Shown in pieces: positions 705 through 37,800 of a stretch of DNA of 64,000 nt. Under the pieces are notes generated by a model that searched no databases, was not told where the DNA came from, and saw nothing but the letters and a program-made list of their open reading frames with translations. Where the stretch lies: positions 186,001 to 250,000 of IMG/VR virus record IMGVR_UViG_3300017917_002466; one strand, written 5' to 3'. Made by a program: the position numbers and the translations under genes. Positions within the stretch are counted from its first letter, which is position 1. Each line of letters opens with the position of its first letter.

Positions 705-733
705 AATATAATATCTTGTAACAAGTTTGTCAA
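705..733 (-). promoter_or_regulatory. sigma70-type early promoter for pncA-nadE
   Basis: TTGACA-17 nt-TATATT on minus strand. Confidence 0.75.
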
Positions 734-741
734 GGACAATC

Positions 742-837
742 TATAAATACCTTTAGAAGTTGGGAGACAAGGGCCGTACACCTTTTTCTTGCCAATCCAA
801 GAATTACCTCAACTTCCTTACTTATACCTGATTGGAG
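742..837 (+). ncRNA. Late promoter box plus structured pseudoknotted 5' leader, copy A
   Basis: TATAAATA 742-749; P1 756-765/807-816; GACA; P2 770-784; P3 786-791/798-803; loop CCAATC 792-797 complementary to GATTGG 830-835, overlapping SD GGAG. Confidence 0.75.
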
Positions 838-843
838 AGCTAT

Positions 844-912
844 TGTCATAAAGATATTCATAAAAGATTTAGTAAATTTACAACAGAAGAATACTTAATT
901 CTGTTTATCTAG
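844..912 (+). pseudogene. C-terminal stub of an HNH endonuclease
   Basis: Translates CHKDIHKRFSKFTTEEYLILFI*, like the CHKAIHKQFG tail of 3404-4084; follows leader A; overlaps the stop of 895-1176 tail-to-tail. Confidence 0.6.
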
Positions 913-1176
913 TTTATTAGATTCGTCAAAATATTGTTTGATTATTTTCAAAACTTGAACCCAGAACACCTTTATTGAAAGTTCTTTGGATTCTCTCATA
1001 TTGTTATCCACGTATCTTATCCCTTTTTCAAAATCCAGAGTATCGTGCAAAAAACCTATAAGAATATAATCAAGTTTATTATTCATCTTATTTGGAACCA
1101 TAGACTGAAGTTCAGCTAATTCCTTTATCATCTTGATAACTAAATCTTTCTTAGTCTGATTTTTTCTTACGTTCAT
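895..1176 (-). CDS. Hypothetical protein
   Basis: 93 aa ORF in a translationally coupled minus-strand run. Confidence 0.65.
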   Translation of the reverse strand: MNVRKNQTKKDLVIKMIKELAELQSMVPNKMNNKLDYILIGFLHDTLDFEKGIRYVDNNMRESKELSIKVFWVQVLKIIKQYFDESNKLDKQN

Positions 1177-1284
1177 AGAATGTAGACCTTGACTGTTGTT
1201 TCACCAAAACATTCGTTAATCATCTTCTCAACGATTGACCACTCACCATTGGTCAACCCACAACCAATCTTTATACTTAATCAT
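1173..1284 (-). pseudogene. Macrodomain (Appr-1-p processing) gene reduced to N- and C-terminal stubs
   Basis: MIKYK start joined out of frame to KIGCGLTNGEWSIVEKMINECFGETTVKVYIL*, the typical macrodomain C-terminal motif (PxIGCGLxGGxW). Confidence 0.7.
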
Positions 1285-1520
1285 TAAAACAACACTCCCT
1301 CGTCCATAAGACGAATCTTTTTTTCTTTTTCACATTTTTCAATACATTCATCACATAGGGCTACTTGATAGACATTTCCATCAAAAAGACTTCCGTATGG
1401 CATTTGAAGAAGAAAAGTCACCCCACCGTTTACATTGTTGAATGATTTGTTAAGGATACTCTCAAGCTTCTTTCCGCAAATCATACAGACTGGCTTCTTA
1501 AATTTCTTCTTGTTGTTCAT
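1284..1520 (-). CDS. Hypothetical Zn-finger protein (CxxC...CxxC)
   Basis: Start moved from 1610 to 1520 (GGAGG RBS before MNNKKKF); CMIC and CDEC pairs. Confidence 0.65.
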   Translation of the reverse strand: MNNKKKFKKPVCMICGKKLESILNKSFNNVNGGVTFLLQMPYGSLFDGNVYQVALCDECIEKCEKEKKIRLMDEGVLF

Positions 1521-1552
1521 TTCTTCCTCCGTTAAATATTTATCATTAAAAA

Positions 1553-1649
1553 TATAAATACAAGTAGAAGTTAAAAGACAGCGTAGGCATACGTTTCTTT
1601 GCTCACTCAAAGATTATTTTAACTTCACTAACATAAACCTAGTGAGAGG
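1553..1649 (+). ncRNA. Late promoter box plus structured pseudoknotted 5' leader, copy C
   Basis: TATAAATA 1553-1560; P1 1567-1576/1617-1626; GACA; P2 GCGTA/TACGT; P3 1596-1601/1608-1613; loop CTCACT 1602-1607 complementary to AGTGAG 1641-1646 at SD AGAGG. Confidence 0.8.
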
Positions 1650-1656
1650 TATATCT

Positions 1657-2406
1657 ATGCGTCCTAAAATTATCAAAGATGAATTTATCCAGAAAGCTAA
1701 TTTTATTCATAATAATAAATTTAATTATGATTTAGTTGTTTTTAACAACGCAAATGATAAAATAACTATCAAATGTAATGATTGTCAAAATATATTTATT
1801 CAAAGATTAAGTTCACACATAGAAAAAAATCACCCTAAAGGATGCCCAAATTGTGCAATAAAACAACAATCCAATGTTCGTTTATATAAAGCATCAAACA
1901 AATTTCATAAAACTATTCAAATTAAACAACCAGATATTGATTTTTCAAAAGATACTTATAGTGGTTGGAATAAGCCTTATAAATGTATTTGTAAAAAATG
2001 TAATCATGTTTGGTTATCTACTCCCAATAATTTAATGAATGGTAAAGGTTGTCCAAAATGTAAATCTTCTAAAGGCGAAAAACAAATTGAACAATGGCTT
2101 AAAGAACATAGTATAAAGTTTATTCCACAAATGAAGTTTGATAAATGTAAAAATAAAAGAAAACTTCCTTTTGACTTTTATTTACCAGAACTTAATACTT
2201 GTATTGAATATGACGGTGAACAACATTTTAAACCTTTTGGTTTTGGTGAAAATCCACAAGAGAAATTTCAAAGAACTAAAATAAATGATGAAATTAAAAA
2301 TCAATTTTGCAAACAAAAAAGAATTAATTTATTAAGGATTAAATTTAATGAGAATATTAATTCTCGTCTAAATCATTATTTAAAACTTCTTTTTAAAATC
2401 TTCTAA
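1657..2406 (+). mobile_element. Free-standing putative homing endonuclease: Zn-ribbon repeats plus C-terminal PD-(D/E)XK (DUF559/Vsr-like) nuclease
   Basis: CNDC/GCPNC/GCPKC modules; SKGEKQI...LPFDFY...IEYDGEQH...LLRI; antisense insertion; ATG 1657 fits the SD. Confidence 0.85.
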
Positions 2407-2937
2407 ACTGATTGTATTCTTTTTAATTTCTTCTTCGCTCATATTCTTTATTTCTTCAACCCTCTGCTTGAGATCATCCATCTTATCCTGTATTTCTTCT
2501 TCTTCGTATCCAATGAATGTCATTTCGTATAAAATATGTGCCACGATGTCAGCTCTACTAAGTTCTATATTATTTGATGTTTCCGTATCAATTTCCATAC
2601 CCAAAAATTCGCACCATTTATTAAACTCAAGAGCCCAATTGACTTCAGAATTTAAAAACTCTTCATCGGCATTAGGAAACAGTTCAGCATCCTCAGTATC
2701 TTTGTGGAGCTTCCCATTCCTTCCGTGAACAGTCCAATATCCATTTTCATTGAATTCATCAGGCGGAACCCACTCAACACAAATTCTCATATCACTTTCT
2801 TTTGAATTCATTGTAGTAAGATTCTGAACAACACTCATATAATCTTCAAGATTATGTGGAGTGACTTCATAAAGCTTAATAAGAGATTCTTTAATTTCGC
2901 TCCAAGTTACGTCTTCCAAAAGTTCTTTGAACTTCAT
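2380..2937 (-). CDS. Hypothetical acidic protein
   Basis: 185 aa ORF with phage-like composition; 3' end overlaps the endonuclease 3' end. Confidence 0.7.
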   Translation of the reverse strand: MKFKELLEDVTWSEIKESLIKLYEVTPHNLEDYMSVVQNLTTMNSKESDMRICVEWVPPDEFNENGYWTVHGRNGKLHKDTEDAELFPNADEEFLNSEVNWALEFNKWCEFLGMEIDTETSNNIELSRADIVAHILYEMTFIGYEEEEIQDKMDDLKQRVEEIKNMSEEEIKKNTISLEDFKKKF

Positions 2938-3260
2938 TGGCTAAATCCTTCGCGAATCATATCCGCTATTTGAAATTCAGAATACCAGTGTCCATCCCAT
3001 CGTTTCTTTTCAACACCATCCACATAAACAACAGCAAAAGGCATTGCACGAATAGAAAGGACTTCTTTTATTTCGCTTGTCAACTGAAGAAGAAAATACA
3101 AACCACTCATAGGAGGATTCGCATTTTCTATTATTCCAATTGCGTTGTTAGTTGTATTGACAAACTTCTTACAAGGAGCCCGAAAGCCGTTGATAATGAC
3201 AACAACGACTTTGCCAGTTGTCGGAACCTTGCTTATACTATCAATCTCTGTAAGTGCCAT
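2934..3260 (-). CDS. Thioredoxin-fold protein with atypical RAPC motif
   Basis: VVVIINGFRAPCKKF at the WCxPC position; IRAMP cis-Pro; VDGVEKKRWDG. Confidence 0.7.
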   Translation of the reverse strand: MALTEIDSISKVPTTGKVVVVIINGFRAPCKKFVNTTNNAIGIIENANPPMSGLYFLLQLTSEIKEVLSIRAMPFAVVYVDGVEKKRWDGHWYSEFQIADMIREGFSQ

Positions 3261-3266
3261 ATAACT

Positions 3267-3294
3267 ATTATAACATTTACCACCAAAATGTCAA
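3267..3294 (-). promoter_or_regulatory. sigma70-type early promoter
   Basis: TTGACA-16 nt-TATAAT with TG upstream of the -10 box. Confidence 0.7.
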
Positions 3295-3302
3295 GATAAA
3301 TA

Positions 3303-3398
3303 TATAAATACTTTGGAAGTTAAGAGACAGGGAGTAATTAACCTTTCTTTACTTACTTAAAGATTATCTTAACTTCACCACACATTCTCAGTAAGGAG
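3303..3398 (+). ncRNA. Late promoter box plus structured pseudoknotted 5' leader, copy B
   Basis: TATAAATA 3303-3310; P1 GAAGTTAAGA/TCTTAACTTC 3316-3325/3367-3376; GACA; P3 3346-3351/3358-3363; loop CTTACT 3352-3357 complementary to AGTAAG 3390-3395 overlapping SD AAGGAG. Confidence 0.8.
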
Positions 3399-3403
3399 AA
3401 ATT

Positions 3404-4084
3404 ATGATTATTTCCAAAACAGTTCTAGTTAATATTAATTCATCAAATATTTATTACTTTGAGTCTAAAGGTTATTCTATTCCAAAACAAATTGATAAAC
3501 ATAAAAGAATCGTTGTCAAAAGAGGAAATAAAATAGAAGTCAAAGTTTCTGATTTGCCAAAAGGAAGTCATATTAAAGTTCTTTGTAAATGTGATGTTTG
3601 TAAAAAAGAGAAACTAATAATTTTCAAATCTTTAACTAATATATTTAAATATCTTTGTCATAGTTGTTCTCATAAAAAATTAATAGGAGATAAACGATTG
3701 AAGTTTTGGGAAAACAAAAATTTTTCACTAAGTCATAAAAATAAACTTTGTTCTAATAATTGGAATGCCAAACATACTGGTAAAAATAGTCCTCTTTGGA
3801 ACTTCAAATTATCTGATAAAGAAAGAGGAAAACAACATCAAATTTCTGGAATTAATCAATGGAAAAGAAAAGTTAAAGAAAGAGATAATCATACTTGTCA
3901 AAAATGTGGTTCAAAAGAATTTCTACAAGTCCACCATATAAATAACTTTAAAGATTTTGAAGAACAAAGAACTGATATTAATAACGGAATTACTTTGTGT
4001 CAAGAATGTCATAAAGCTATTCATAAACAGTTTGGTTTAAAAACTAAACTAAGTAATCTTTTAGAATTCTTAAATCATACTTAA
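3404..4084 (+). mobile_element. Free-standing HNH homing endonuclease
   Basis: C-terminal CQKCG...VHHINNF...NGITLCQECHKAIH HNH motif; antisense; overlaps the ligA stop. Confidence 0.88.
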
Positions 4085-5995
4085 AAATTCTTTTTCGTTG
4101 ATTACTTTAACTCCTATTTTAGATGCTTTTTCATTCTTAGCACTTCCAGAATCATTATCGTTAGTTACCAAATAATCAAGTCCTTTAGAAATAGTTGATT
4201 TATAAACTCCTCCGTTATCTTCAACCATTTTGATAAAATCATCTCTCTTTCCTAAAGATAAAGCACCAGTTACACAAAAAGACTTTCCATCAAGATTACT
4301 TCTTTTATTTGACTTTTTTTCCTTCTTCATAATTGTTATTCCAACCTCCATCAGTTCATTTATAACCTTCTGCTTCTTCTTCAATCCATCTATGATTGCC
4401 TCGGCTGTAACTCTTCCAATTCCCTTGATACCAGCCAAGTCTTCAACTCCCTGCGAAAGAATCTTGGTAACAGAATCCAAACCATTCTTTTCAAGAAGCT
4501 CTGCCGTCTTGTCACTGAAGTTCGGGATATTCAAACCTCCGACGAACTCCCCAAAAGACAGTTCTTTCTTTGCGTTCAAAGTATCCACAATCTTGTTTGC
4601 GGAACTAGAACCGAATCCTTCAAGCTCGCAAATCATATTCGGCTTCAATTTGTAAAGATCAGCAGGAGTCTTGACAAGACCCGCTTCATACAACTTCTCA
4701 AGTGTAGCAGAAGCAATCCCTTTCAGATCAAGCTTCTTCACCCACTTATTCAGATTGCCAATTTCTCCACCAGAGCATCCTTCATTTTCGCAAGTAAGGA
4801 AAATTCCACCAACAGAAACCTTCTCTCCACAAATAGGACAGTTCTTCGGAACGATAAGCTTATCTCCGCGTTTTGCTCCCGGATGATTACTCAAGTTCTC
4901 GCATATCTGTGGTATAACATCGTTTGCGCGCTCAACAAGAACTGTATCTCCCTTGTGGAAATTAAACTCATTGAACATTCCAAGATTGTGAACAGAAGCC
5001 CTTGATACCTTGACTCCTGCAAGTTCAACAGTCTCCATCACAAGAACTGGAGTGATTCTTCCCGAATTGCCCAACTGCCACTCAACCCCAAGAACCTTTG
5101 TCTGCTTCTTCATACTTGTAAACTTCCAAGCAATCATTCCACGATAGTTCTCACCCTTGAATCCAAGAGTCATAAGAACATCAATATCATTTGGCTCAAT
5201 CACAAGACCATCAATTTCGTGGTCAAGGCTTGCTCTCGTACTTTGTTCGTATTCATTGTAAACAAGTTTGGCTGTTTCAATATTGCCACAAAAATGCTTA
5301 CAAGTCCTCAGACCAAGCTTCTTCTCAATGAAGTCATACATTTCCTTCTTGGTCTTGAAATCTCCACTCGCAAAGTAATATTCAACATAAAGATACTCGG
5401 TATATTTTCCGTCATATCCCTTTGCGATACCAGAAGCTCCGTTCCTTACATTCTGATAAGGTCTTTCTCCGCGGATATTGCAGACCTGATTGACAGCCGA
5501 AAAATCGCCAGTCTTCATCATAATCTCACCACGAAGACTGCCGGTATAAGAATTAGGAACATTAGCTTTGACATTCTGCATCCGAAGAACATTCTGAGTA
5601 ATCACTTCACCAGTGATACCATCGCCCCTTGTGATTGCTTTTGTCAGCTTTCCATTGGTATATTCAATTTCAAGGGAGATACCATCAAGCTTCTCTGAAA
5701 CAATCATTTCCTCACCAGCAAGCCCATTATCCTTTGCCCAAGCAACGAACTCTTCAACAACGTTGACCTTGTTGCAACTGTGCATCGGAATCTTGTGCTT
5801 TGCCTTATCCCATTCAGAAGCTTCAGGAACAGGGGCACCAATCGTCTTCAAGAAGGGATCATTCGGATAAAGCCTTGTGAACTCATCTTTGAGTGCATCA
5901 AAATCCTTATCAGAAATTGTAGAAAATGACTTGTTGTAATAAGAGTCACAGGCTTCAACTAATTTTCTTTTCATTTCCTCATATTTCATAATCAA
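4070..5995 (-). CDS. ligA: NAD-dependent DNA ligase
   Basis: EKLDG adenylation motif, RGE, OB fold, C4 Zn finger, HhH repeats, C-terminal BRCT. Confidence 0.97.
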   Translation of the reverse strand: MIMKYEEMKRKLVEACDSYYNKSFSTISDKDFDALKDEFTRLYPNDPFLKTIGAPVPEASEWDKAKHKIPMHSCNKVNVVEEFVAWAKDNGLAGEEMIVSEKLDGISLEIEYTNGKLTKAITRGDGITGEVITQNVLRMQNVKANVPNSYTGSLRGEIMMKTGDFSAVNQVCNIRGERPYQNVRNGASGIAKGYDGKYTEYLYVEYYFASGDFKTKKEMYDFIEKKLGLRTCKHFCGNIETAKLVYNEYEQSTRASLDHEIDGLVIEPNDIDVLMTLGFKGENYRGMIAWKFTSMKKQTKVLGVEWQLGNSGRITPVLVMETVELAGVKVSRASVHNLGMFNEFNFHKGDTVLVERANDVIPQICENLSNHPGAKRGDKLIVPKNCPICGEKVSVGGIFLTCENEGCSGGEIGNLNKWVKKLDLKGIASATLEKLYEAGLVKTPADLYKLKPNMICELEGFGSSSANKIVDTLNAKKELSFGEFVGGLNIPNFSDKTAELLEKNGLDSVTKILSQGVEDLAGIKGIGRVTAEAIIDGLKKKQKVINELMEVGITIMKKEKKSNKRSNLDGKSFCVTGALSLGKRDDFIKMVEDNGGVYKSTISKGLDYLVTNDNDSGSAKNEKASKIGVKVINEKEFLSMI

Positions 5996-10644: not shown

Positions 10645-12069
10645 TTATTTCCAGTCTTTTATAAACTTTTCAATTGATTTCATATCATTTATATCAATTT
10701 CATTATTAAGTACATAATCTATTGTGTCTTTAATAATTTTACCAAATTGAATTCCTTGTTTAATATCTGGTCTTAATTTCATTATTAAAGCACCATTAAT
10801 AACTTTTTTAACAGGATCAACAATATCTTTACCTTTAACCATATTTCTGACTTTTTCTATTTTTTCTTGAATATCATCCCATTCTTTTTGGTCAAATAAA
10901 CTACCTCTGCTTTTATTATCACAATATGCCGTCTTTTCTAATAAATCAAAATATGGCGATTTAACTAAAGTAGCAACAGTACTATTATTCATTTTTAAAA
11001 TATCAAAAAATTTCATATGATTTTCGGCTACCCATTTTATAGCAGAAATTGTATCATTATCCATCTTCATTCTTTTACCAATTTCTTCTATCATCTTACC
11101 AGATTGTTCAGCATGGCCATGATAAGAATGGGTTCCTTTATCTGTTAATGCATATGTTTTATTTTTACCCAAATCATGCATTAATAAACACCAATTTAAT
11201 AAAGCATTAGGTTCTTTATTTACTTTAAGAACTTCCATGACATGACCGAAAACATTTGGAGATTCTGGATGGTGGTCTGGTGAATGTAACATTGACTCTT
11301 GTTCCACCAATTCAGGAAGAACATATTTCAATATTCCAATATCCTTTAACATAATAATAGCATCTGCAAACTTTGATCCGGATTGTTTTGCCATAGATGT
11401 AAGTTCTTTTAGTATTCTTTCTTGTGCGACCTTCTTTATCTCTGGTGCGTGTGACTTCATTGCTTCTAATGTTTCTTTGTCAATATCAAATCCAAGACGA
11501 GAAGCAAAACGAATTCCACGAAGAACTCTTACTTCATCTTCCTTAAAGCGTAAATTAGGATCACCAACGGCAGCAACCACTTTCTTTTCAATATGGTCTA
11601 ATCCACCATGATGGTCTATAATATTACCATCTTTATCAATACCAAGTTGATTGATTGTAAAATCTCTACGAGAAGCATCATCCTTAAATGATGTTGTAAG
11701 TTCTACTTTGTCAGCTCCTTTACCACCTTCACCAGAATACAAATCTTTTCTATAGGTAGCAATTTCTACGTTTTGACCTTTGTATGGAATAACAGTAACG
11801 CCCATAGCCTTATTCTTTCCAATGTCAATAGTTCTTCCAAATATCTTTTCTATTTCATCTGGAGTAGCATTAGTAGTAATATCAACATCATTTGGATTAT
11901 TACCTAATACCAAATCTCTAACAACACCACCAACCATGAGGGCTTCAAAACCAGCAGCATTGATCTTATCTAAAATCTCAATAGCGTTTCTGATTTCGGG
12001 ATTGCTTTGTTTAATGGAATCCCAGTTATTTAATTTAGTTTCTTGAAAGTAATACTTTTCAAATCTCAT
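10645..12069 (-). CDS. cca: CCA-adding tRNA nucleotidyltransferase (class II) with HD domain; CTS-like N-terminus
   Basis: VGGVVRD, DVDITT, RRDFTIN, EDxxRxxRxIRF, HD motif MHDLGK; starts MRFEKYYFQE. Confidence 0.92.
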   Translation of the reverse strand: MRFEKYYFQETKLNNWDSIKQSNPEIRNAIEILDKINAAGFEALMVGGVVRDLVLGNNPNDVDITTNATPDEIEKIFGRTIDIGKNKAMGVTVIPYKGQNVEIATYRKDLYSGEGGKGADKVELTTSFKDDASRRDFTINQLGIDKDGNIIDHHGGLDHIEKKVVAAVGDPNLRFKEDEVRVLRGIRFASRLGFDIDKETLEAMKSHAPEIKKVAQERILKELTSMAKQSGSKFADAIIMLKDIGILKYVLPELVEQESMLHSPDHHPESPNVFGHVMEVLKVNKEPNALLNWCLLMHDLGKNKTYALTDKGTHSYHGHAEQSGKMIEEIGKRMKMDNDTISAIKWVAENHMKFFDILKMNNSTVATLVKSPYFDLLEKTAYCDNKSRGSLFDQKEWDDIQEKIEKVRNMVKGKDIVDPVKKVINGALIMKLRPDIKQGIQFGKIIKDTIDYVLNNEIDINDMKSIEKFIKDWK

Positions 12070-18027: not shown

Positions 18028-19212
18028 TTAAGTTTTTAAATTATAATCAGTCTTATTATAGTATTTATAAATATTTCCTTCATAATTTTTGAGCAAAATA
18101 CTTTCATTTTCATAACCAACCACATAATCAGGATTGATTGGGATTTTACCTCCACCACCGGGAGCATCAATAACAAATTGAGGAATTGCGTATCCTGTAG
18201 TATAGCCCCTTAAACTTTTAATAATTTCAACTCCTTGAGATATAGGTACTTTAAAATGAAATCCTCCTTTTATTAAATCCATAGAATAAATATAATATGG
18301 TTTAATTCTTATTTTAAGTAAGTCTTTCATTAAGTTTCCCATTGTTTCAACATTATCGTTTATATCTTTTAAAAGAACTGTTTGACTGCCCAAAGGAATT
18401 CCAATATTAGCCAATTTATTACAAGCGATTGAAACTTCTTTAGTTAATTCATCCGGGTGAGTGAAATGAATACTCATATATAATGGATGATATTTTTTTA
18501 ATACTTTTAATAAACCTGAAGTTATTCTTTGTGGCAGAACTACTGGTACTTTAGTTCCAATTCTTATAATCTCAACGTGTTTTATTTTTCTAATTTTATT
18601 TAAAAGATTATCTATAATTTCATCTGAAAAAGTTAAAAAATCTCCTCCACTAAGTAAAACATCACGAACTTCTTTATGTCTTTGAATATATTCAATTGCT
18701 AAATCCCAATCTTTAATATTAGGAATTTCATCAAAATCATTACAATTAATCATTCTTGATCGAGTGCAATATCTACATCTTGCGGCACAAAAATGAGTAG
18801 TTAAAAATAAAACTCTATCTGGATATTTATGAACTAATCCCGGAATAACCATATCCGAGTCTTCGTCTAACGGATCGTCTAACTCTTCCGGTCTATTTTC
18901 CATTTCTTCAATTACAGGAATAACAGTCTTCCTAAGAGGATAATCAATTCCTTTATTATAAATCAGATTTAAAACATAAGGAGTAATTGAAATATTTGCT
19001 CCTTTTTTAAAGGCTTGAATTTCTTTTTCAGAAAGTTGAATAAATTTTTGAATTTGACTATAAGAAATAATCCTATTTCTTATTTGCCATTTCCAATCAT
19101 TCCATTCTTTTTTTGAAGCATTCAATTTTTTGATAAAATAATTTTTATAATTACTACCCGAAGGCTCTTCTTTGTCTGAGGAATATTCTTCCAATTTTTT
19201 ATTCTCTGGCAT
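18028..19212 (-). CDS. kamA: Lysine 2,3-aminomutase family radical SAM enzyme
   Basis: WNDWKWQIRNRI, GLVHKYPDRVL, CAARCRYC, LLSGGD, DAPGGGGKIP (PLP lysine). Confidence 0.9.
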   Translation of the reverse strand: MPENKKLEEYSSDKEEPSGSNYKNYFIKKLNASKKEWNDWKWQIRNRIISYSQIQKFIQLSEKEIQAFKKGANISITPYVLNLIYNKGIDYPLRKTVIPVIEEMENRPEELDDPLDEDSDMVIPGLVHKYPDRVLFLTTHFCAARCRYCTRSRMINCNDFDEIPNIKDWDLAIEYIQRHKEVRDVLLSGGDFLTFSDEIIDNLLNKIRKIKHVEIIRIGTKVPVVLPQRITSGLLKVLKKYHPLYMSIHFTHPDELTKEVSIACNKLANIGIPLGSQTVLLKDINDNVETMGNLMKDLLKIRIKPYYIYSMDLIKGGFHFKVPISQGVEIIKSLRGYTTGYAIPQFVIDAPGGGGKIPINPDYVVGYENESILLKNYEGNIYKYYNKTDYNLKT

Positions 19213-19783: not shown

Positions 19784-19824
19784 TATAAATACTTATAACC
19801 AATAAACCTTTATACTTATTTATA
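19784..19824. promoter_or_regulatory. Face-to-face late promoter boxes
   Basis: TATAAATA on plus at 19784-19791 and on minus at 19817-19824. Confidence 0.55.
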
Positions 19825-19836
19825 GGAATATAAAAT

Positions 19837-20757
19837 ATGAAAAAACTTACTCAAAAAGAAGTCATTAAAAAATTTCAAAATATTCATAATACAAAGTATG
19901 ATTATAGTCTTGTTGATTATTCAAATGCTCATACTAAAATCTGTATTATTTGTCCGGAACACGGTGAATTTTGGCAAGAGCCAAATAGTCACTGGACTGG
20001 TTGTGGTTGCCCCAAATGTAAATCCGAAAAATTATCCTTAACATTTATTTCTAATCAAACGGATTTCGTTAATAAAGCCCTTAAAGTTCATAAAAAGTTT
20101 ATTTATGATAAAGTTCAGTATATCAATAGTCAAACTAAAGTTTGTATTATTTGTCCAGAACACGGTGAATTTTGGCAAACTCCATCCAAACATCTTTTCG
20201 GACAAGGATGTTCTAAATGTTCTAATATTATTAATTCAAACCAATTAAAATCCAATAAAGAAGAATTTATTAAAAAAGCTCAAAATAAACATAAACATCT
20301 TTATGAATACGATGTTGTTAAATATATTAATGCTTTGACTAAAGTCTGTATTATTTGTCCAGAACACGGTGAATTTTGGCAAACTCCAGCAAACCATTTA
20401 AGTGGTCAAGGATGTCCATTTTGTAAAAAATCTAAAGGCGAAAAACAAATTGAACAATGGCTTAAAGAAAATAGTATAGATTTTATACCACAAAAAAGAT
20501 TTGAAGATTGTAAAAATATTTACCGACTATCGTTTGATTTTTATATTCCTAGTCTCAATTTTTGTATTGAATACGATGGTCAACAACATTTTAAACCAAC
20601 CGGATTTGGTGGAAATCCCCAAGAAAAATTTCAAAGAACTATTGAAAACGATAGAATTAAAAATAATTACTGTCAACACAAAAATATTAAATTACTAAGA
20701 ATTTCTTATAAAGAACTTAAAAAGATAAAAGAAATTTTAAAAACCAAATTGCTTTAA
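19837..20757 (+). mobile_element. Free-standing putative homing endonuclease: three DUF723-like Zn repeats plus PD-(D/E)XK nuclease
   Basis: 3x KxCIICPEHGEFWQxPxxHxxGxGCxxC; FDFY...IEYDGQQH; antisense; overlaps the stop of 20737-21267. Confidence 0.88.
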
Positions 20758-27206: not shown

Positions 27207-28148
27207 TTAAGCTCCTAATATTTCAATCAATATTTTAGCTCTATTAATATAAGTATGATTCTCTTTAACATATAACATCATTCTTTTCATATTTTCTTTT
27301 GATAGGGAAGCATAAGATTGTTCAGTAGTATAAAAAAGAGTATATGGGTTATTATCATAGGCTATATATCCTTTAAGAATATTACCAATATGTGGTGAAT
27401 TAGTTCCTGTAAACTTACCATAGCTAATATTTTTCCATATCCTACAAGGTATATAACCGCATTGTTGGTGCCAATTTCCACGAATATCTACTGAAATATA
27501 AGAGTTCTGAATTAGCTTTTTATTTTCTTCAAAGCTAATATTTCCTTGTCCAACTTTTATATTTTTCCCATTCTGTTGACAACATTGAGCAAACATTTGA
27601 AACTTAGGTAAAATATTATCGTGATTAGTACTTCCTATATAATAAACTGTTGGAATATTGGGATTGAATCTTATAGGATTTTCAACGTCTATTTCATGTG
27701 GAAGTAAATCGGTTGCCCAAGGTTGATAAATCGCATTATTCTTTTTATCCCAAAAACAAAAATCCCTTATTTTTTCAACTGTTGGCGTATTAGCAGTTTT
27801 AACTAAAAGATTATTAGGATCATTATAATTCATACTAATTCCACGTTCACAAGGCTCAACATAATTACAAAGATTGATTTGTTTACAACCAATGGCAACA
27901 TATTTGTCTGGATTACAATGATGAGTTATATATTTTATATTCTTAAAAAGAGGAACTTGTTGGTCTACTTGACCTTCTGTAAAAATAACAGTATCATTAA
28001 AATCAAAGTCTTTTACTTTTTCAACATCGCTATTATCAAACCAATAAGGTGTATATCCAAGATATTCAAATGCACGAAAGTATCCATAATAAACATAGCT
28101 ATTAGTATGCGTATGTAACTTATGACCCCATATCATAAACTTTTTCAT
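27207..28148 (-). CDS. Putative glycosyltransferase-associated protein
   Basis: Island context; YIPCRIWKNISYG...HTYINR tail like CgeB-type GT-B proteins. Confidence 0.55.
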   Translation of the reverse strand: MKKFMIWGHKLHTHTNSYVYYGYFRAFEYLGYTPYWFDNSDVEKVKDFDFNDTVIFTEGQVDQQVPLFKNIKYITHHCNPDKYVAIGCKQINLCNYVEPCERGISMNYNDPNNLLVKTANTPTVEKIRDFCFWDKKNNAIYQPWATDLLPHEIDVENPIRFNPNIPTVYYIGSTNHDNILPKFQMFAQCCQQNGKNIKVGQGNISFEENKKLIQNSYISVDIRGNWHQQCGYIPCRIWKNISYGKFTGTNSPHIGNILKGYIAYDNNPYTLFYTTEQSYASLSKENMKRMMLYVKENHTYINRAKILIEILGA

Positions 28149-29107
28149 ATTAACTCTCCAACTCTGTTTTTAATTTTATTATACAAACAATCTTTAATAT
28201 CTATGTCACCAAAATACTTAATAAACTCGCTATTTGAAAAAACGTAATGACCACAAACTTTAATTAGCTTTAATTTATTTTCAAACGGATTAAAGGTATT
28301 GTCGCCTTTAAGCCACTTAACCCACATATTAGAATTATAACATATTTCAAAAAATTTATCAAAGCTTTTTTCATCCATTTTATCTAAATAACATTCAGTT
28401 TCCATTCTACCAATTTCTGGAGCAATATTAATAGCATCTAATCCTTTTTGAAATTTAGACTGAATTAACGAACTATCTAAGTAATCTCCGTTATGTTCTT
28501 TACTCAAAATATTATAAAGTTTACAAATTTCAATCATTTCTCTAAGTTTATTTTCTTCATACTTACCAGTATTCATATCAAGTTTTAAATTTGTTCCAGA
28601 TTGTATAACAGCATATTTAATTTGATTAAAGCATTTAACATTCTTTTTCATAAAAGTAAGCATATACATTAATTGATCTGGTTTAAAACTTCTTATAGAT
28701 TCTTCAGTTCCAATTTCAAACATTATTTTTGAATTTTTTTTATTACAAAAATTTATGAAATTCGCTGTTATTTCAAAACATTTCATAAAATCTTCATCAA
28801 GCTTCCAAGGGTCAATATGAATCAAATCCATATATTCACAATCAGTAATTAAAGAAGCAATACCAAAGTCTTCTTGAATTCCTTGTTTTGGTCCTCCATG
28901 ATCTCTGCATATAACAATATCTTTATTTCTTTCTTTAACATATTGTACAAATTCTTCAGTAGTCCAATTATTAACATAACCACCATTAAAATCTATTTGT
29001 CTTCTTGAGGGAATCAAACCAATATTCAAACCAAAATTATTTAAGTTAATAATTACATCAACTATATTCTTACTCATTGGACCTAAAAACAACTTGGGAA
29101 AATTCAT
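28145..29107 (-). CDS. GatZ/KbaZ-like TIM-barrel aldolase/epimerase
   Basis: IPSRRQID..GGY, RDHGGP, IHIDP, KEHNGDY. Confidence 0.6.
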   Translation of the reverse strand: MNFPKLFLGPMSKNIVDVIINLNNFGLNIGLIPSRRQIDFNGGYVNNWTTEEFVQYVKERNKDIVICRDHGGPKQGIQEDFGIASLITDCEYMDLIHIDPWKLDEDFMKCFEITANFINFCNKKNSKIMFEIGTEESIRSFKPDQLMYMLTFMKKNVKCFNQIKYAVIQSGTNLKLDMNTGKYEENKLREMIEICKLYNILSKEHNGDYLDSSLIQSKFQKGLDAINIAPEIGRMETECYLDKMDEKSFDKFFEICYNSNMWVKWLKGDNTFNPFENKLKLIKVCGHYVFSNSEFIKYFGDIDIKDCLYNKIKNRVGELI

Positions 29108-29124
29108 ATTGGATTCCTTTAAGT

Positions 29125-29484
29125 CTAAATATTAACGTCTTTAATTCCATGATTTCTAGGAACGGTAATAGAAACTGATGTATTTTCTCCATCAAGTTTA
29201 CAATCATTAATAACAACTCTGATTCCTCCCCCAATTCCCATAATAAGTTGGTCATATATTATACCCGATTCGGCTAATTGTTTTTCAGTTGCTTTTCTAG
29301 TTGACTCTCTCCTACCAGTTGTCAAAATAATGTTATAACCTTTAATATCCCACTCTAATAATTTTTCTTTTGTGCCTTCTAACAATTCTAATTTGAAACT
29401 TTCTGAAGTAGTCTCAGTAGGTGGATTATGTCTAACTAATGTACCATCTATATCACAAAAAATTGTTTTAGGTCTGGAATCCAT
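29125..29484 (-). CDS. Small HAD phosphatase (capsule-biosynthesis type)
   Basis: FCDIDGTL, LTTGR, IND. Confidence 0.8.
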   Translation of the reverse strand: MDSRPKTIFCDIDGTLVRHNPPTETTSESFKLELLEGTKEKLLEWDIKGYNIILTTGRRESTRKATEKQLAESGIIYDQLIMGIGGGIRVVINDCKLDGENTSVSITVPRNHGIKDVNI

Positions 29485-29497
29485 ATAAACTCCTTTT

Positions 29498-30676
29498 TCA
29501 TTCCCATATTATTATACTTTCATTTTGTTTTTTCAAATTATTTACAATTTCTTCTTTATAAGCTCCAACTTTTAATATTATAGCCGAGTCGTTTTTAATT
29601 TCAATCTGATTAGGTGTTCTGATCTTTAAATTATAGCCGTATAATCTTGTATTATTTTTCATTTCAGAATTGTCAAGTATTAACTTAATCCTACTTTTAT
29701 TCAGTCCCAAGTTTAATAAAAATTGAGAAAATATATGGGCTCCAAATAAGTAAACATCTCCTTCAAACTTCTCTAATTTTTGATTGATTTCTGCCACAAA
29801 GTCTTGATAATATTTGATGCAAGACAGATACATTTCTTTATACTCATTATATTTATTAATGACAATACTATTGATTTTTTCATTGGTTTTTCTAGTCACA
29901 TATATTATGCTATGATTCGTATAATAAGTTTTATAAAGTATCTTAAAACTATTTTGGGCTAATAAAAAATCAGTAATTTCTTCAGTCAAAAATATTGTGT
30001 GCTCAAAATTAATAGTATTAATGAACTTATTTTTCAAAAAATCATAAAGATTTGGAATAGAGAATATATGTAAGCCTTCATCATTTAAAGACTGATTAAT
30101 CAAAGATAGAAAAGAGTTAATATCATAAGTATGCTCTAAAGTGTGCGAGTGCACTATTATATCCTTTTTTGATACTTTTAAGTCTTCAAAAAAAGAATCA
30201 ATGTATTTAATTTTGATATTTAAGTCTTTGGGCTTAAAAATATTTGGCTCAATAATTGTCCAATTTTTAATTTGTGGATTACTGCTCAAAACCATTGAAG
30301 CCAATTTTCCATTAGACCCACCAATTTCTAAAATATCAGGTTCTAATACTTTTTCTTTTTGAAGTATTTCATTGATTACATCTACAAAACAATTCCTATG
30401 TTTTTCCCACACTTCTCCAATTGATTCGGAATGATACTTAGAATAGATTAAATCTGGCTTTAAAACATTTCTTAGTTGAATGATTCCAGTATCTTTGCAA
30501 ATATCCCATATCATATCACAGAACAAATCTTTCTCAAAAGGCTCTTTAGTATGACCAATAAAAACCGGAAATTCTTTAATCGTAATTAAATGTTCTAAGC
30601 TGTCCAAACCCGTAACTATACTTTTAGTTCGGGTTTGATGTATGTAATTTTTATCCATCATATTTGATTCTCGCAT
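29498..30676 (-). CDS. NDP-sugar C-methyltransferase-like protein
   Basis: LEIGGSNG, HSHTLEH, FEH, C-terminal FGAH...ILDN Rossmann domain. Confidence 0.75.
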   Translation of the reverse strand: MRESNMMDKNYIHQTRTKSIVTGLDSLEHLITIKEFPVFIGHTKEPFEKDLFCDMIWDICKDTGIIQLRNVLKPDLIYSKYHSESIGEVWEKHRNCFVDVINEILQKEKVLEPDILEIGGSNGKLASMVLSSNPQIKNWTIIEPNIFKPKDLNIKIKYIDSFFEDLKVSKKDIIVHSHTLEHTYDINSFLSLINQSLNDEGLHIFSIPNLYDFLKNKFINTINFEHTIFLTEEITDFLLAQNSFKILYKTYYTNHSIIYVTRKTNEKINSIVINKYNEYKEMYLSCIKYYQDFVAEINQKLEKFEGDVYLFGAHIFSQFLLNLGLNKSRIKLILDNSEMKNNTRLYGYNLKIRTPNQIEIKNDSAIILKVGAYKEEIVNNLKKQNESIIIWE

Positions 30677-32231
30677 TAATTTCTTTCAATTTCCTATTTA
30701 AGTTAAATTTTCCAAAATTGAATAAAAATGTACTCAAAGGTTTTTCATGCAAAGGAGCCATATTAATCCAAATTATACTTGTCAATATTTCAACTTTATT
30801 GAAATCATAATGATTTTTAAGTATAAAATTATGAAGTACTTCTTTACAATTAATCAAATTTTTACTGCATAACAAATCACAGTATATTTTGTTATCTTGT
30901 TTTTCAATAGTGTATAATTTTCTATTGATTATGTCGTGATTGAAAATTAAGTTATGATTAAGCTTAGCCAAGTCATAATAAATATCTCCATTAATCAAAT
31001 CACCGGCAAAATCTTGTCGCCAGTCTAATAAAACAAAATCCTCTTTACTTCGACAAATTATATTATCTAAGATGTAATCACCATGATATTGGTATGGTTG
31101 TTCTGAGCATAACCAGTCCCTATCTATTGATTCTATTAATACTTTGGCGCTTGGTACTAAAACTTCATTGATAATATTAGGTTTATCTGTATCGTTTTCT
31201 TGTTCCAAGTATTTTTTAATTCTTTGAAGAGTCTTATCAAAATAAAAACTCTCGCATAGTTTTTTGAACTGATTATTTTTGGGCTTAACAATCCAAAGAT
31301 TGTTCTTACTCCAATTCAGAAAAGTTAAAAAAAAATCATCATTAACTACTTTGGATAATAACTCCCCTTCTGAATACTCATACTTATAAAAATTATTACG
31401 ATAGTCGATCAATTTCGGAGTAAGTGGTTCTAATTGTTTACATCTTTGAACTCTATTTAAGCACATTTTTTCGTCAAAAAAGAACTTTATAACAAAACCA
31501 TCAAAGATAAAAATGGACTCATCTACTTTATCTAATATTTCAAACTTATCGCTTATATGACTTCTAGCAAATTTTAACTCAGAAGAAGTACCAACATCAA
31601 ACCATGTCTTAAATTCCAGTATTTTAAAATCTTTATTCATATTGTTTATCCCATCACAGTCAGACAATTCTTGACAAGATGGGTTCTTGTTATAACAATT
31701 CTCCAATGCTTTCCAAAAAACATCATAATCCTTAATACCACACAATCCAATATAACAAAAAGTTGAATCGTGCAACTGACCTTTATCAAAGATTTTGAAC
31801 TTTCCTTGACTATTAATCATCCTATATTGTGAAGTATTGTTTTTATTACAACCAACCACATAGTTGTATTTTGGTTTAGGTATGGATTCAACAACAATGG
31901 TATCTGCGGCATGGAAGATAAATGGACATTGTAATCTATCCTTTGCTTTCAACATTGAATATCCTAAACTACTACCTTCACCTGAAAACTTATCAACTTC
32001 TACAAACTCAAAATGTCTATCATTATAAGCTAAAGTTAAAAAATCACGAACCTGATTCCCAAAATGTCCTAAGGTTATTACAAACTTAGTATCTTTAGGA
32101 TAGTTTTCTATGATATAAGATATGGATGGCTTCTTTCCAATTCTAACCAAGGATTTATTTGTATACTTAGTTAAATCACCAAGTCTACTTCCCAATCCAC
32201 CAGTAGTTATTAATACTTTAAACTCTTCCAT
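30651..32231 (-). CDS. Fusion of sugar-phosphate nucleotidyltransferase and choline/aminoglycoside-type kinase
   Basis: TGGLGSRLGDLT...NKSL; YHGDYILDNI, LLDWRQ. Confidence 0.85.
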   Translation of the reverse strand: MEEFKVLITTGGLGSRLGDLTKYTNKSLVRIGKKPSISYIIENYPKDTKFVITLGHFGNQVRDFLTLAYNDRHFEFVEVDKFSGEGSSLGYSMLKAKDRLQCPFIFHAADTIVVESIPKPKYNYVVGCNKNNTSQYRMINSQGKFKIFDKGQLHDSTFCYIGLCGIKDYDVFWKALENCYNKNPSCQELSDCDGINNMNKDFKILEFKTWFDVGTSSELKFARSHISDKFEILDKVDESIFIFDGFVIKFFFDEKMCLNRVQRCKQLEPLTPKLIDYRNNFYKYEYSEGELLSKVVNDDFFLTFLNWSKNNLWIVKPKNNQFKKLCESFYFDKTLQRIKKYLEQENDTDKPNIINEVLVPSAKVLIESIDRDWLCSEQPYQYHGDYILDNIICRSKEDFVLLDWRQDFAGDLINGDIYYDLAKLNHNLIFNHDIINRKLYTIEKQDNKIYCDLLCSKNLINCKEVLHNFILKNHYDFNKVEILTSIIWINMAPLHEKPLSTFLFNFGKFNLNRKLKEINARIKYDG

Positions 32232-32568
32232 AACTATCCTCCAACCTAATTACATCATCCAAGAAGTTTGTAGAGCTTTCTAAATAAAGACTATCAACCA
32301 ATGCTTCCATTCTATGAATTACTAAAGGCTCTATTGTATAGAAGTCTTTTTTGTTCAGCAATATCTCTGATAGATTTTCTTTGCTATCTCCGACATAAAA
32401 CTTTAAACACCCCTCTATAACATAAAAAGATTCATGCTTCTTTTTATGGTATTGTAAACTACAACGATGACCAGCTTTCATAAACAGTTCTTTAACAACA
32501 TAACCTTTATTAACTTCAATCCACTTTTCCCAACCCCAAGGTTTTTCCTTCAGTATAATATTTTTCAT
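32218..32568 (-). CDS. Cupin (mannose-6-phosphate isomerase type II-like)
   Basis: KPWG, SLQYHKKKHE, HR, DVIRLEDSYGR. Confidence 0.88.
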   Translation of the reverse strand: MKNIILKEKPWGWEKWIEVNKGYVVKELFMKAGHRCSLQYHKKKHESFYVIEGCLKFYVGDSKENLSEILLNKKDFYTIEPLVIHRMEALVDSLYLESSTNFLDDVIRLEDSYGRV

Positions 32569-34074: not shown

Positions 34075-34076
34075 TA

Positions 34077-36257: not shown

Positions 36258-36259
36258 TT

Positions 36260-37675: not shown

Positions 37676-37800
37676 TTTTTAACTCCTCTTATTAAAATTA
37701 AATCCACCGAAAACAAATTACTTTTATAATACCATTTATTCATTAATTTATTATATTCAATTTATTGTTCATCGCAAAATATTTTTATATTCTTAAATTT

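What the first reader, a model, noticed from the sequence alone, without database searches (positions are those of the whole stretch)
742..3398. Unassigned pseudoknotted RNA leader, in three covarying copies, that pairs a loop onto the ribosome-binding site of homing-endonuclease genes
Seen: copies at 742-837, 1553-1649 and 3303-3398 share TATAAATA, a 5-6 nt spacer, P1 (GAAGTTRRRA / YYYYAACTTC), invariant GACA, hairpin P2, 6-bp P3 with a 6-nt loop, invariant TTA, a 13-14 nt linker, then a hexamer overlapping the SD. P1 and P3 carry compensatory changes (P3: TTCTTG/CAAGAA, TCTTTG/CAAAGA, TCTTTA/TAAAGA). The P3 loops differ, yet each is the exact reverse complement of its own SD-overlapping hexamer: CCAATC/GATTGG, CTCACT/AGTGAG, CTTACT/AGTAAG. 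Copy C precedes a PD-(D/E)XK nuclease; B precedes an HNH nuclease and A an HNH stub, so the leader travels independently of nuclease family. Established: T4 homing endonucleases (e.g. I-TevI) use late promoters and simple RBS-occluding hairpins; T4 late transcripts start a few nt after TATAAATA, which would place the 5' end near P1. Inference: a portable translational switch (protein- or ligand-responsive riboswitch-like element, or ribozyme/scaffold RNA) that limits toxic nucleases. I cannot match it to an RNA class I know.
Basis: partly seen in the sequence, partly recalled or inferred. Interest (0 to 1): 0.92.

Follow-up and report, generated by a model that had tools for sequence, protein, structure and literature searches.

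The report
Kissing-hairpin leader locking homing-endonuclease ribosome sites
A previously uncatalogued ~85-nt RNA leader, found only in a group of uncultured marine giant phages, folds into a three-way junction whose hairpin loop 'kisses' a second small hairpin that holds the ribosome-binding site of selfish nuclease genes, most likely keeping their translation low.

Summary
The three window copies (756-839, 1567-1650, 3316-3399, + strand) belong to a family of at least 25 distinct intact leaders in about 17 viral or metagenomic contigs, with at least 8 copies in the 253-kb source phage contig. Every intact copy has a T4-late-type promoter (T/C)ATAAATA 2-7 nt before P1, a three-way junction and a 6-nt P3 loop complementary to the hexamer before the Shine-Dalgarno (SD) sequence. 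In the aligned set, 132 of 132 cells pair, across 17 different loop sequences.

The 3-4 nt before the hexamer pair with the SD after it. So the 'pseudoknot' is an intramolecular kissing complex between the P3 hairpin and an SD-holding hairpin.

Downstream ORFs are always homing endonucleases, of three families: HNH, GIY-YIG and zinc-finger/Vsr-like.

Rfam 15 has no match. I found the leader in no cellular genome and no GenBank phage. Eighty other phage loci with the same Vsr-like nuclease lack it.

Most likely function: a cis-acting translational attenuator of late endonuclease mRNAs. A ligand- or protein-gated switch is neither shown nor excluded. Verdict: a new structural variant of a known regulatory theme.

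The parts
742..749 (+). Copy A: late-promoter-like TATAAATA, 6 nt before P1
   Evidence: The same (T/C)ATAAATA lies 2-7 nt upstream in all of the 25 intact family members that could be parsed (6 of the 22 could not, because of P1 bulges), although the models R1 and R2 do not include it.
756..839 (+). Copy A leader RNA. P1 756-765/807-816; J1/2 GACA 766-769; P2 770-785; P3 786-791/798-803; loop 792-797 (CCAATC); J3/1 TTA 804-806; G-free linker 817-825; P4 826-829/836-839 (weak here, 2 bp); hexamer 830-835 (GATTGG).
   Evidence: CM 92 bits; parsed; the nested MFE fold recovers P1, P2 and P3.
832..912 (+). HNH C-terminal remnant after copy A (..CHKDIHKRF..). The endonuclease ORF is internally deleted, leaving an orphan leader.
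   Evidence: compare the CQECHKAIHKQF motif at the end of ORF C.
1553..1560 (+). Copy B: TATAAATA
1567..1650 (+). Copy B leader RNA. P1 1567-1576/1617-1626; GACA 1577-1580; P2 1581-1595; P3 1596-1601/1608-1613; loop 1602-1607 (CTCACT); TTA 1614-1616; linker 1627-1636; P4 1637-1640 (ACCT)/1647-1650 (AGGT, the SD); hexamer 1641-1646 (AGTGAG).
   Evidence: CM 89.6 bits.
1657..2406 (+). Homing-endonuclease ORF B (249 aa): treble-clef zinc fingers (DUF4379/DUF723) plus a C-terminal Vsr-like/PD-(D/E)XK nuclease (FDFY..CIEYDG.QH).
   Evidence: Pfam; PHROG phrog_559/9084; alignment A6; weak match of the A6 profile to AbaSI, E 0.043.
3303..3310 (+). Copy C: TATAAATA
3316..3399 (+). Copy C leader RNA. 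P1 3316-3325/3367-3376; GACA 3326-3329; P2 3330-3345; P3 3346-3351/3358-3363; loop 3352-3357 (CTTACT); TTA 3364-3366; linker 3377-3385; P4 3386-3389 (TCTC)/3396-3399 (GAGA, the SD); hexamer 3390-3395 (AGTAAG).
   Evidence: CM 88.5 bits. The nested MFE fold shows P1 and P4.
3404..4084 (+). Homing-endonuclease ORF C (226 aa), HNH family.
   Evidence: Pfam HNH, E 5e-10; PHROG HNH families.

Best explanation
The element is the 5' leader of late mRNAs for free-standing homing-endonuclease genes in one lineage of uncultured marine jumbo phages. Transcription from a T4-late-type promoter, (T/C)ATAAATA, would start at or within the first bases of P1.

The RNA folds into a three-way junction. P1 is 6-12 bp with a free sequence. 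P2 is a variable hairpin. P3 is the conserved stem UCUUUR/YAAAGA. The junction strands are GACA, U and UUA. A G-free, pyrimidine- and A-rich linker of about 7-17 nt leads to a short hairpin, P4. The 3' strand of P4 is the 3' part of the Shine-Dalgarno sequence (AGG or GAG). The 6-nt loop of P4 ends in the first two SD purines. That loop pairs base for base with the 6-nt P3 loop, as in TAR-TAR*-type kissing complexes.

The SD GGAGG therefore straddles two helices, the kiss and P4, and both must open before a 30S subunit can bind. P4 alone is marginal (+0.5 to -3.2 kcal/mol). The kiss (-3.7 to -8.4 kcal/mol of stacking) is what locks it. The three-way junction acts as a scaffold that presents the P3 loop to P4.

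The net effect is inferred, not shown: low, attenuated translation of potentially toxic nucleases from a strong late promoter. The single-stranded linker may serve as a standby site that allows a trickle of initiation. The 5'-terminal P1 helix may also stabilise the mRNA.

Shown here: the structure, its covariation, the promoter association, the exclusive association with endonuclease genes, and the lineage restriction. Inferred: the transcription start, the repression itself, and whether repression is constitutive.
For: - Family: 25 distinct intact copies.
- Kissing helix: 132 of 132 cells paired on 22 sequences. The central positions use all four Watson-Crick pair types, and 17 distinct loops occur. 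The three later members also comply, including one variant with a 7-nt loop.
- P4: the core pairs 80-91 and 81-90 are paired in 21 of 22 and 22 of 22 sequences. CCU/AGG changes to CUC/GAG in 3 sequences.
- P1: all 10 pairs change on both sides. P3 is 100% paired. P2 folds as a hairpin in 20 of 22 copies although its sequence is free.
- Strand: G-U pairs are frequent (for example pair 17-33 is G-U in 20 of 22), so the fold is specific to the sense RNA strand.
- Promoter: the motif lies upstream of every copy although it is outside the models. In the window the same octamer sits 28-46 nt before at least 6 minus-strand ORF starts.
- Downstream ORFs: all are homing-endonuclease families or their remnants.
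- Energies.
- Precedent: RBS-sequestering hairpins in T4-family endonuclease genes (PMC2988022, section 12).
Against: - There are no expression data. The phages are uncultured, so the transcription start and the repression are inferences.
- The promoter lies upstream of the whole structure, so the T4 escape route, in which late transcripts lack the inhibitory arm, does not apply. How any translation occurs is therefore unexplained.
- The strong sequence conservation of P3 and the junction (GACAG, UUUCUUUG, CAAAGAUUA) goes beyond what base pairing needs. It hints at an extra partner, either a protein or a tertiary contact, that this explanation does not account for.
- Nested MFE predictions recover the full fold in only about half of the copies tested, and their z-scores are unremarkable.
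- A fourth endonuclease in the window (19837-20757), of the same family as B, uses the late promoter without this leader. The leader is therefore not obligatory.
Confidence: 0.68

Rival explanations
1. It is a protein-gated operator. A phage-lineage-specific (or host) RNA-binding protein recognises the conserved junction and P3 stem, or the kissing complex itself as Rop does. It would either stabilise the lock (repression) or open it (timed activation). This adds a regulator to the best explanation rather than replacing it.
For: P3 and the junction strands are nearly invariant in sequence across genomes, while P1, P2 and the loops drift freely. Pair 17-33 is a conserved G-U. The leader is restricted to one phage lineage and absent from 80 other loci with the same nuclease family, as expected if a lineage-encoded factor is needed. 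Three unrelated nuclease families share it, so any factor is not the nuclease itself.
Against: No candidate protein was identified. The sequence conservation could equally reflect RNA tertiary contacts or recent common descent.
Confidence: 0.22
2. It is a small-molecule or ion riboswitch. A ligand bound in the three-way junction would set the P3 orientation and so control the kiss and SD access.
For: It has a three-way junction with about 11 conserved unpaired or junction-adjacent nucleotides and an SD-sequestering 3' module, a layout seen in many riboswitches.
Against: There is no conserved alternative (anti-) pairing. P1 is long and stable rather than a switching helix. The kiss is plain Watson-Crick with a free sequence and needs no ligand. 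The controlled genes are selfish nucleases, not transporters or enzymes. No Rfam aptamer matches.
Confidence: 0.07
3. It is an activator or stabiliser rather than a repressor. The 5' three-way junction would protect the mRNA from 5'-end-dependent decay. The loop contact next to the SD would enhance initiation, as the repZ/repA pseudoknot of IncI-alpha and IncB plasmids does.
For: P1 sits at the predicted 5' end. Pseudoknots adjacent to an RBS that activate translation are known (own knowledge).
Against: Here the SD itself is inside both helices, 2 nt in the kiss and 3 nt in P4. That is occlusion, not presentation. No upstream leader peptide or competing inhibitory stem is present.
Confidence: 0.08
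4. It is a self-cleaving ribozyme or another catalytic or processing RNA.
For: It is a compact pseudoknotted fold with invariant junction nucleotides, in a phage context where small ribozymes are common.
Against: No match to any ribozyme model, even at E up to 10. The conserved nucleotides do not resemble hammerhead, twister, pistol or hatchet cores.
Confidence: 0.02
5. It is a DNA-level repeat, such as recombination homology or a homing-site relic, and its RNA fold is incidental.
For: There are at least 8 copies in one genome, including orphan and truncated copies. Within a genome the P1 sequences are similar, which suggests gene conversion or duplication.
Against: Compensatory changes in five helices, abundant G-U pairs that would be A-C mismatches on the other strand, and perfect loop-hexamer complementarity across 17 loop sequences all require selection on the sense RNA.
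Confidence: 0.03

Closest known systems
RBS-sequestering hairpins of T4-family homing-endonuclease genes (I-TevI, I-TevII, I-TevIII, segB, Aeh1 mobE)
   Same: Same gene class (homing endonucleases in phages with TATAAATA late promoters) and same principle: the SD is buried in RNA structure to limit translation (PMC2988022, section 12; Gibb & Edgell 2009, cited there).
   Different: Those are single hairpins with the late promoter inside the hairpin, so late transcripts lack the inhibitory arm. Only read-through early or middle transcripts are repressed. Here the promoter precedes the whole fold. The fold is a three-way junction plus a kissing hairpin. The cassettes are often antisense to their neighbours, so no read-through transcript exists.
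Conserved 5'-UTR hairpins of free-standing Vsr-like and GIY-YIG endonucleases in marine 'fractured genes' (Dassa et al. 2009, PMC2677866)
   Same: Marine metagenomic phage-like loci, the same nuclease families, TATAAATA, and two conserved complementary motifs upstream of the endonuclease ORF.
   Different: They are described as simple hairpins that contain the promoter. No three-way junction or loop-loop contact is described. The figure and supplement could not be read here, so an overlap with this family is unresolved.
TAR-TAR* and ColE1 RNA I-RNA II kissing complexes
   Same: Two hairpins whose 6-7-nt loops pair over their full length to form a quasi-continuous stacked helix (own knowledge).
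   Different: Those are intermolecular or engineered. Here the kiss is intramolecular, tethered by a three-way junction, and one partner holds an SD.
Guanidine-II (mini-ykkC) riboswitch
   Same: Translation is controlled through a kiss between two hairpin loops in one leader (own knowledge).
   Different: mini-ykkC loops are the conserved ACGR sequence and need a ligand to kiss. Here the loops have free sequence and are fully Watson-Crick complementary. There is no Rfam match.
SD-sequestering pseudoknot riboswitches (preQ1-II, SAM-II, SAM-V)
   Same: The SD is drawn into a pseudoknot helix.
   Different: Those have H-type pseudoknots with ligand-binding triplexes and conserved sequences, and they sit upstream of metabolic genes. 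There is no model match.
HEARO / omega-RNA of IscB (HNH-associated RNA)
   Same: A structured RNA next to HNH nuclease genes.
   Different: HEARO is a large guide RNA for an RNA-guided nuclease, with an unrelated fold and no Rfam match here. The present element is a short mRNA leader shared with non-HNH nucleases.

Membership tests
Any Rfam 15 family (4227 models) | Score at or above the family gathering threshold, or at least a suggestive E-value, over the element | tested here: not met
   No gathering-level hit in the 64-kb window. Between 650 and 3500, at E up to 10, none of the 5 listed hits is on the leader strand over a leader; the only overlaps are minus-strand snoRNA-model matches, taken as chance, that cover the first bases of copy B and the last bases of copy C. 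No hit at E up to 1 in five other loci that carry family members.
T4-type endonuclease RBS hairpin (I-TevI / mobE type) | The SD is base-paired in a local hairpin | tested here: met
   The P4 anti-SD/SD stem is present in the 22 aligned copies. Its core pairs are paired in 21-22 of 22 and covary CCU/AGG to CUC/GAG. P4 is only 3-4 bp and needs the kiss.
T4-type endonuclease RBS hairpin (I-TevI / mobE type) | The late promoter lies inside the hairpin, so late transcripts cannot form it | tested here: not met
   The promoter lies 2-7 nt upstream of P1 in the copies that could be parsed, so the whole fold is downstream of the predicted start.
T4-type endonuclease RBS hairpin (I-TevI / mobE type) | The inhibited transcripts are read-through from upstream early or middle promoters on the same strand | tested here: not met
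   In the window and in 7 of 12 other leader sites examined the cassette is antisense to the flanking genes.
Riboswitch (generic) | A conserved aptamer pocket plus mutually exclusive expression-platform pairings | tested here: inconclusive
   Conserved junction nucleotides exist. No conserved alternative pairing was found by inspection or in the MFE and centroid folds. Ligand binding cannot be tested with these tools.
Guanidine-II (mini-ykkC) | Two hairpins with conserved ACGR tetraloops | tested here: not met
   The loops are 6 nt with variable sequence (17 variants) and no ACGR.
Small self-cleaving ribozymes (hammerhead, twister, pistol, hatchet) | A match to the family covariance model or core nucleotides | tested here: not met
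   No such model hit at E up to 10. Cleavage itself cannot be tested here.
Loop-loop kissing complex (structural class) | Two hairpin loops with full-length complementarity that covaries | tested here: met
   Columns 41-46 pair with 83-88 in 132 of 132 cells. Both partners are closed by stems, P3 and P4. Permutation test: 0 of 100,000.

The most novel reading that the evidence does not exclude
The leader could be a gated riboregulator of a new class. The conserved three-way-junction core (GACAG, U, UUA and the invariant P3 stem) would bind a phage-lineage-specific protein or a small molecule. That partner would open or clamp the P3-P4 kiss, timing homing-endonuclease synthesis to a particular state of the infected cell.
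Probability: 0.2. Interest if true: 0.85.

Novelty: new variant of a known kind. Interest (0 to 1): 0.62.

Why it matters
- It adds a well-supported, uncatalogued structured-RNA family. Its covariation is about as clean as comparative data allow.
- It shows that phage homing endonucleases can be restrained by an architecture quite different from the T4 paradigm. That architecture works on the late transcript itself and on cassettes inserted antisense to their neighbours.
- It is a natural example of an intramolecular kissing lock on a ribosome-binding site in which four loop positions are freely reprogrammable. That is of interest for RNA structural biology and for designing orthogonal translational regulators.
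- The leader marks a clade of uncultured marine jumbo phages. It is a compact handle for finding endonuclease cassettes and their decayed relics in metagenomes.
- If the conserved junction binds a factor, it would open a new regulatory circuit in phages that cannot yet be cultured.

Tried and rejected
1. The first collection pattern (GAAGTT N4 GACA .. ATTA N4 AACTTC) returned 76 loci. About 70 were an unrelated conserved coding sequence (..YEVAGQLIK..). Only the source contig held true copies.
The metagenome scan gave 4 true members among 120 loci. The genome scan gave none among 120. Absence from cellular genomes is therefore only sampled.
3. A protein-guided search with the Vsr-like nuclease gave 80 loci, none with the leader under R1 or R2. 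The single 29.9-bit hit, L270:1056-1148(-), has a junction-like GACAG..ATTA fold. It has no kissing partner and precedes a methyltransferase-like ORF, so I did not count it as a member. L485, L448 and L419 were weak chance hits.
4. blastn of copy B against 50,697 GenBank phage records gave no match. The nearest GenBank relative of a window protein, Marine virus AG-345-E15, has no leader in its 66 kb.
5. I tested whether loop diversity enforces orthogonality between copies in one genome, and rejected it. Contig 3300029286_000101 reuses CCACAU and CCAUAC in two copies each, and window B and C differ by one base.
6. I looked for a conserved alternative (switching) pairing that involves the SD, the linker or the P3 5' strand. 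None was consistent across copies.
7. I checked for a conserved P2 loop motif. There is none. Three copies have a T-loop-like UUCGAAA and the others are unrelated.
8. The supplements of Dassa 2009 and of the 2023 catalogue of viral structured RNAs are not held as text. Prior unnamed listing of this motif cannot be excluded.
Full report
**The observation**

The window carries three copies of the element on the + strand, at 742-839, 1553-1650 and 3303-3399. Each has the following parts, in order:
- TATAAATA and a 5-6 nt spacer;
- a 10-bp helix P1 (GAAGTTRRRA / YYYYAACTTC);
- GACA;
- a variable hairpin P2;
- a 6-bp helix P3 with a 6-nt loop;
- TTA, then the 3' strand of P1;
- a linker of 9-10 nt;
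- a hexamer that is the exact reverse complement of the P3 loop, followed directly by the Shine-Dalgarno (SD) purines.

I built a covariance model from five copies: the three in the window and two found elsewhere in the same contig. It scores the window copies 88-92 bits, and nothing else in the 64 kb scores above 18.5 bits.

Copy B precedes a 249-aa ORF (1657-2406). This ORF has treble-clef zinc fingers (DUF4379/DUF723) and a C-terminal FDFY..CIEYDG.QH nuclease. The nuclease is of the Vsr-like/PD-(D/E)XK type. The support is weak PvuRts1I-like_N and DUF5889 hits and a weak match of the family profile to AbaSI.

Copy C precedes an HNH ORF (3404-4084; Pfam HNH, E 5e-10).

Copy A is followed only by a remnant..CHKDIHKRF.., which matches the C-terminal HNH motif of ORF C. 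It is an orphan leader left by an internal deletion.

**The family**

The window is bases ~186001-250000 of IMG/VR contig 3300017917_002466, which is 253,664 bp long. Pattern scans followed by model searches recovered more copies in that contig:
- L036, L050 and L088 have intact leaders.
- L111 and L092 are truncated just after P1.

The scans also recovered copies in about 16 other viral or metagenomic contigs. In all I have 25 distinct intact leaders.

Flanking genes recur among these contigs: a tRNA nucleotidyltransferase, phrog_21938, glycosyltransferases and nicotinamide phosphoribosyltransferase. Several contigs are 220-250 kb. The nearest GenBank relative of one window protein is a marine single-cell virus. 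The carriers are therefore related, uncultured, probably marine jumbo phages.

The leader was not found in several other searches:
- 80 other viral loci that encode the same Vsr-like nuclease family;
- 120 pattern-selected cellular genome loci;
- GenBank phages, searched by blastn;
- the marine relative itself.

**Structure**

I aligned 22 distinct copies in register (A8) and counted pairs.
- P1: all 10 pairs change on both sides. Unpaired cells come from copies with one-base bulges.
- P2: the base pairs 17-33 and 18-32 are 98% paired, and 17-33 is a conserved G-U. The rest of P2 folds as a hairpin in 20 of 22 copies although its sequence and length are free.
- P3: 100% paired, and nearly invariant in sequence (UCUUUR/YAAAGA).
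- Loop-hexamer helix: 132 of 132 cells paired. Five of its six pairs change on both sides, and the central positions use A-U, U-A, C-G and G-C.

Seventeen distinct loop sequences occur. Permuting hexamers among them never reached the observed complementarity in 100,000 trials. The three members found later also comply. One of them has a 7-nt loop but keeps six pairs.

The 3-4 nt just 5' of the hexamer pair with the 3-4 nt just 3' of it. ACCU, UCCU, ACUU, UCUC and ACUC pair with AGGU, AGGA, GGGU, GAGA and GAGU. The core pairs are paired in 21-22 of 22 copies. They switch from CCU/AGG to CUC/GAG in three copies.

The hexamer is thus the 6-nt loop of a small hairpin, P4, whose 3' strand is the SD. 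The tertiary contact is therefore a loop-loop kiss between P3 and P4. Formally this is a pseudoknot. Geometrically it resembles the TAR-TAR* complex, in which all six loop bases pair (own knowledge).

The SD (GGAGG, AAGGAG or GAGAGG) lies across the boundary. Its first two purines are in the kiss, which explains why loops always begin C-C or C-U. Its next three are in P4.

**Strand and level**

G-U pairs are common in the model. Examples are pair 17-33 in 20 of 22 copies, several pairs in P1 and P4, and one in the kiss. On the other strand these would be A-C mismatches. Selection therefore acts on the sense RNA, not on DNA or on an antisense transcript.

**Promoter and context**

Every intact copy that could be parsed has (T/C)ATAAATA 2-7 nt upstream of P1; one copy has TATAAACA. 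The models do not include this region.

In the window the same octamer sits 28-46 nt before the start codons of at least six minus-strand ORFs. Other genes have sigma-70-type promoters, including a 12 of 12 consensus promoter that diverges from copy C. This fits a T4-like early/late programme.

By the T4 rule, the start lies about 6 nt after the octamer (own knowledge). That would place the 5' end of the RNA at the first bases of P1.

Nearly all genes in the window are on the minus strand, so the endonuclease cassettes are antisense inserts. The same holds at 7 of 12 other leader sites examined. At about 95-105 nt from promoter to start codon, the endonuclease leaders are also much longer than other late leaders in the window.

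**Cargo**

Every intact leader precedes a homing-endonuclease ORF or its remnant. Three families occur:
- HNH, with NUMOD3 in L036;
- GIY-YIG (phrog_314; match to the I-TevI catalytic domain, E 0.003);
- the zinc-finger/Vsr-like family (phrog_559).

The sequence GGAGGUAUCUUAUG, running up to the start codon, is shared across families. The module therefore runs from the promoter to the AUG.

Within a genome the copies share P1 sequence, although their nuclease families differ. This indicates intragenomic spread or gene conversion of the module. Pseudogenised cargo (L050 with 15 codons, L088 with 43 codons) and orphan or truncated leaders (A, L111, L092) fit the usual decay cycle of homing endonucleases.

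**Mechanism**

P4 alone is marginal, at +0.5 to -3.2 kcal/mol. The kiss contributes -3.7 to -8.4 kcal/mol of stacking. The simplest reading follows from this.
- The three-way junction is a scaffold that holds the P3 loop against P4.
- This locks the SD in two stacked helices and lowers initiation on an mRNA made from a strong late promoter.
- With J3/1 (3 nt) longer than J2/3 (1 nt), the junction falls in the class where P3 folds back along P1, towards the 3' tail. This rests on the Lescoute-Westhof rule, from own knowledge, and is an inference.
- The linker contains no G in the 22 aligned copies. It would stay single-stranded and could serve as a 30S or S1 standby site.

I rate this attenuator model at about 0.68. 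Some observations remain unexplained. P3 and the junction are conserved in sequence far beyond what pairing needs, and the leader is lineage-restricted. Both would fit an additional lineage-encoded RNA-binding factor, which I rate at about 0.2 as an add-on.

A metabolite riboswitch is unlikely. There is no alternative pairing, P1 is stable, the kiss needs no ligand, and the cargo is non-metabolic. A ribozyme has no support.

**Comparison with what is known**

T4-family endonuclease genes (I-TevI, I-TevII, I-TevIII, segB, Aeh1 mobE) are restrained by simple RBS hairpins (PMC2988022). In those, the late promoter lies inside the hairpin, so late transcripts escape repression.

The present element shares the purpose and the promoter type, but it fails two defining features of that scheme. 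The promoter is outside the fold, and there are no same-strand read-through transcripts.

Dassa et al. 2009 (PMC2677866) reported conserved hairpins with TATAAATA upstream of marine Vsr-like and GIY-YIG endonucleases. I could not read their figure or supplement, so an overlap is possible but unresolved. A 2023 catalogue of more than 10,000 candidate viral RNAs (PMC10690425) might also list the motif without a name, and its tables are not held either.

Rfam 15 has nothing that matches.

**Verdict**

This is a real, strongly supported and uncatalogued RNA family. It is a new structural variant, a three-way junction with a kissing-hairpin SD lock, of a known regulatory theme: translational restraint of phage homing endonucleases. 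Its function is inferred, not shown.

Noticed in passing
window 19784-20757 (+): A fourth homing-endonuclease ORF (306 aa, phrog_559, the same family as ORF B) has TATAAATA 45 nt upstream. Its leader is short, A/U-rich and lacks the three-way junction, with at most a weak CCUUUAUA..UUAUAGG hairpin over the SD. The leader is therefore not obligatory for this nuclease family in this genome.
   Followed up: partly
window 3267-3294 (-) and 705-733 (-): A perfect (12 of 12, with TG) and a near-perfect (11 of 12) sigma-70-type promoter drive the minus-strand genes and diverge from leader copies C and A. Their -35 boxes account for the 'GTCAAG' shared just upstream of A and C. The cassettes sit back-to-back with early-type promoters.
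   Followed up: partly
window 1284-2937: Cassette B lies between two co-oriented minus-strand genes with no room for a separate promoter for the downstream one. Minus-strand read-through should therefore produce RNA antisense to the whole endonuclease cassette and leader. The 3' ends of ORFs B and C also overlap the convergent minus-strand ORF ends by 27 and 15 nt.
   Followed up: no
L111:94-240; L092:1700-1789(-); L050:4717-4761; L088:842-970 (all in the source contig): These are decayed copies. Two leaders are truncated right after P1, one of them fused to the middle of an HNH ORF (..HLQAHHINN). Two intact leaders are followed by nuclease ORFs cut to 15 and 43 codons.
   Followed up: partly
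L270:1056-1148 (-): A junction-like fold (P1 AACGAG/CUCGUU, GACAG, P2, a longer P3, AUUA) scores 29.9 bits. It has no complementary hexamer, lies upstream of a TATAAATA, and precedes a methyltransferase-like ORF. It could be a distant relative or a chance match.
   Followed up: partly
window 28000-37700 and 18028-19212 (-): A dense block of auxiliary genes: two B12-binding radical-SAM enzymes, a lysine-2,3-aminomutase-like radical-SAM enzyme, glycosyltransferase and methyltransferase fusions, and a cytidylyltransferase. Elsewhere there are a CCA-adding/poly(A)-polymerase-like enzyme (10645-12069), an NAD-dependent DNA ligase (4070-5995) and an isochorismatase (145-675).
   Followed up: no
window 62193-62299 (both strands): A palindromic hairpin (GAAGTTGAAAGA..TTTCAATTTC) inside the 980-aa ORF gives weak model hits (16-18 bits) on both strands. 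It is probably unrelated.
   Followed up: no
L001-L076 (most): A conserved marine-phage coding sequence (..YEVAGQLIKNVADATDKLMELQKK..) matches the first search pattern by chance in about 70 viral contigs. It is unrelated to the leader.
   Followed up: no
L095, L160, L091 (P2 loops): Three family members carry a tRNA T-arm-like GGGUUCGAAACC or UUCGAAA sequence in P2. Other members have unrelated P2 loops.
   Followed up: no
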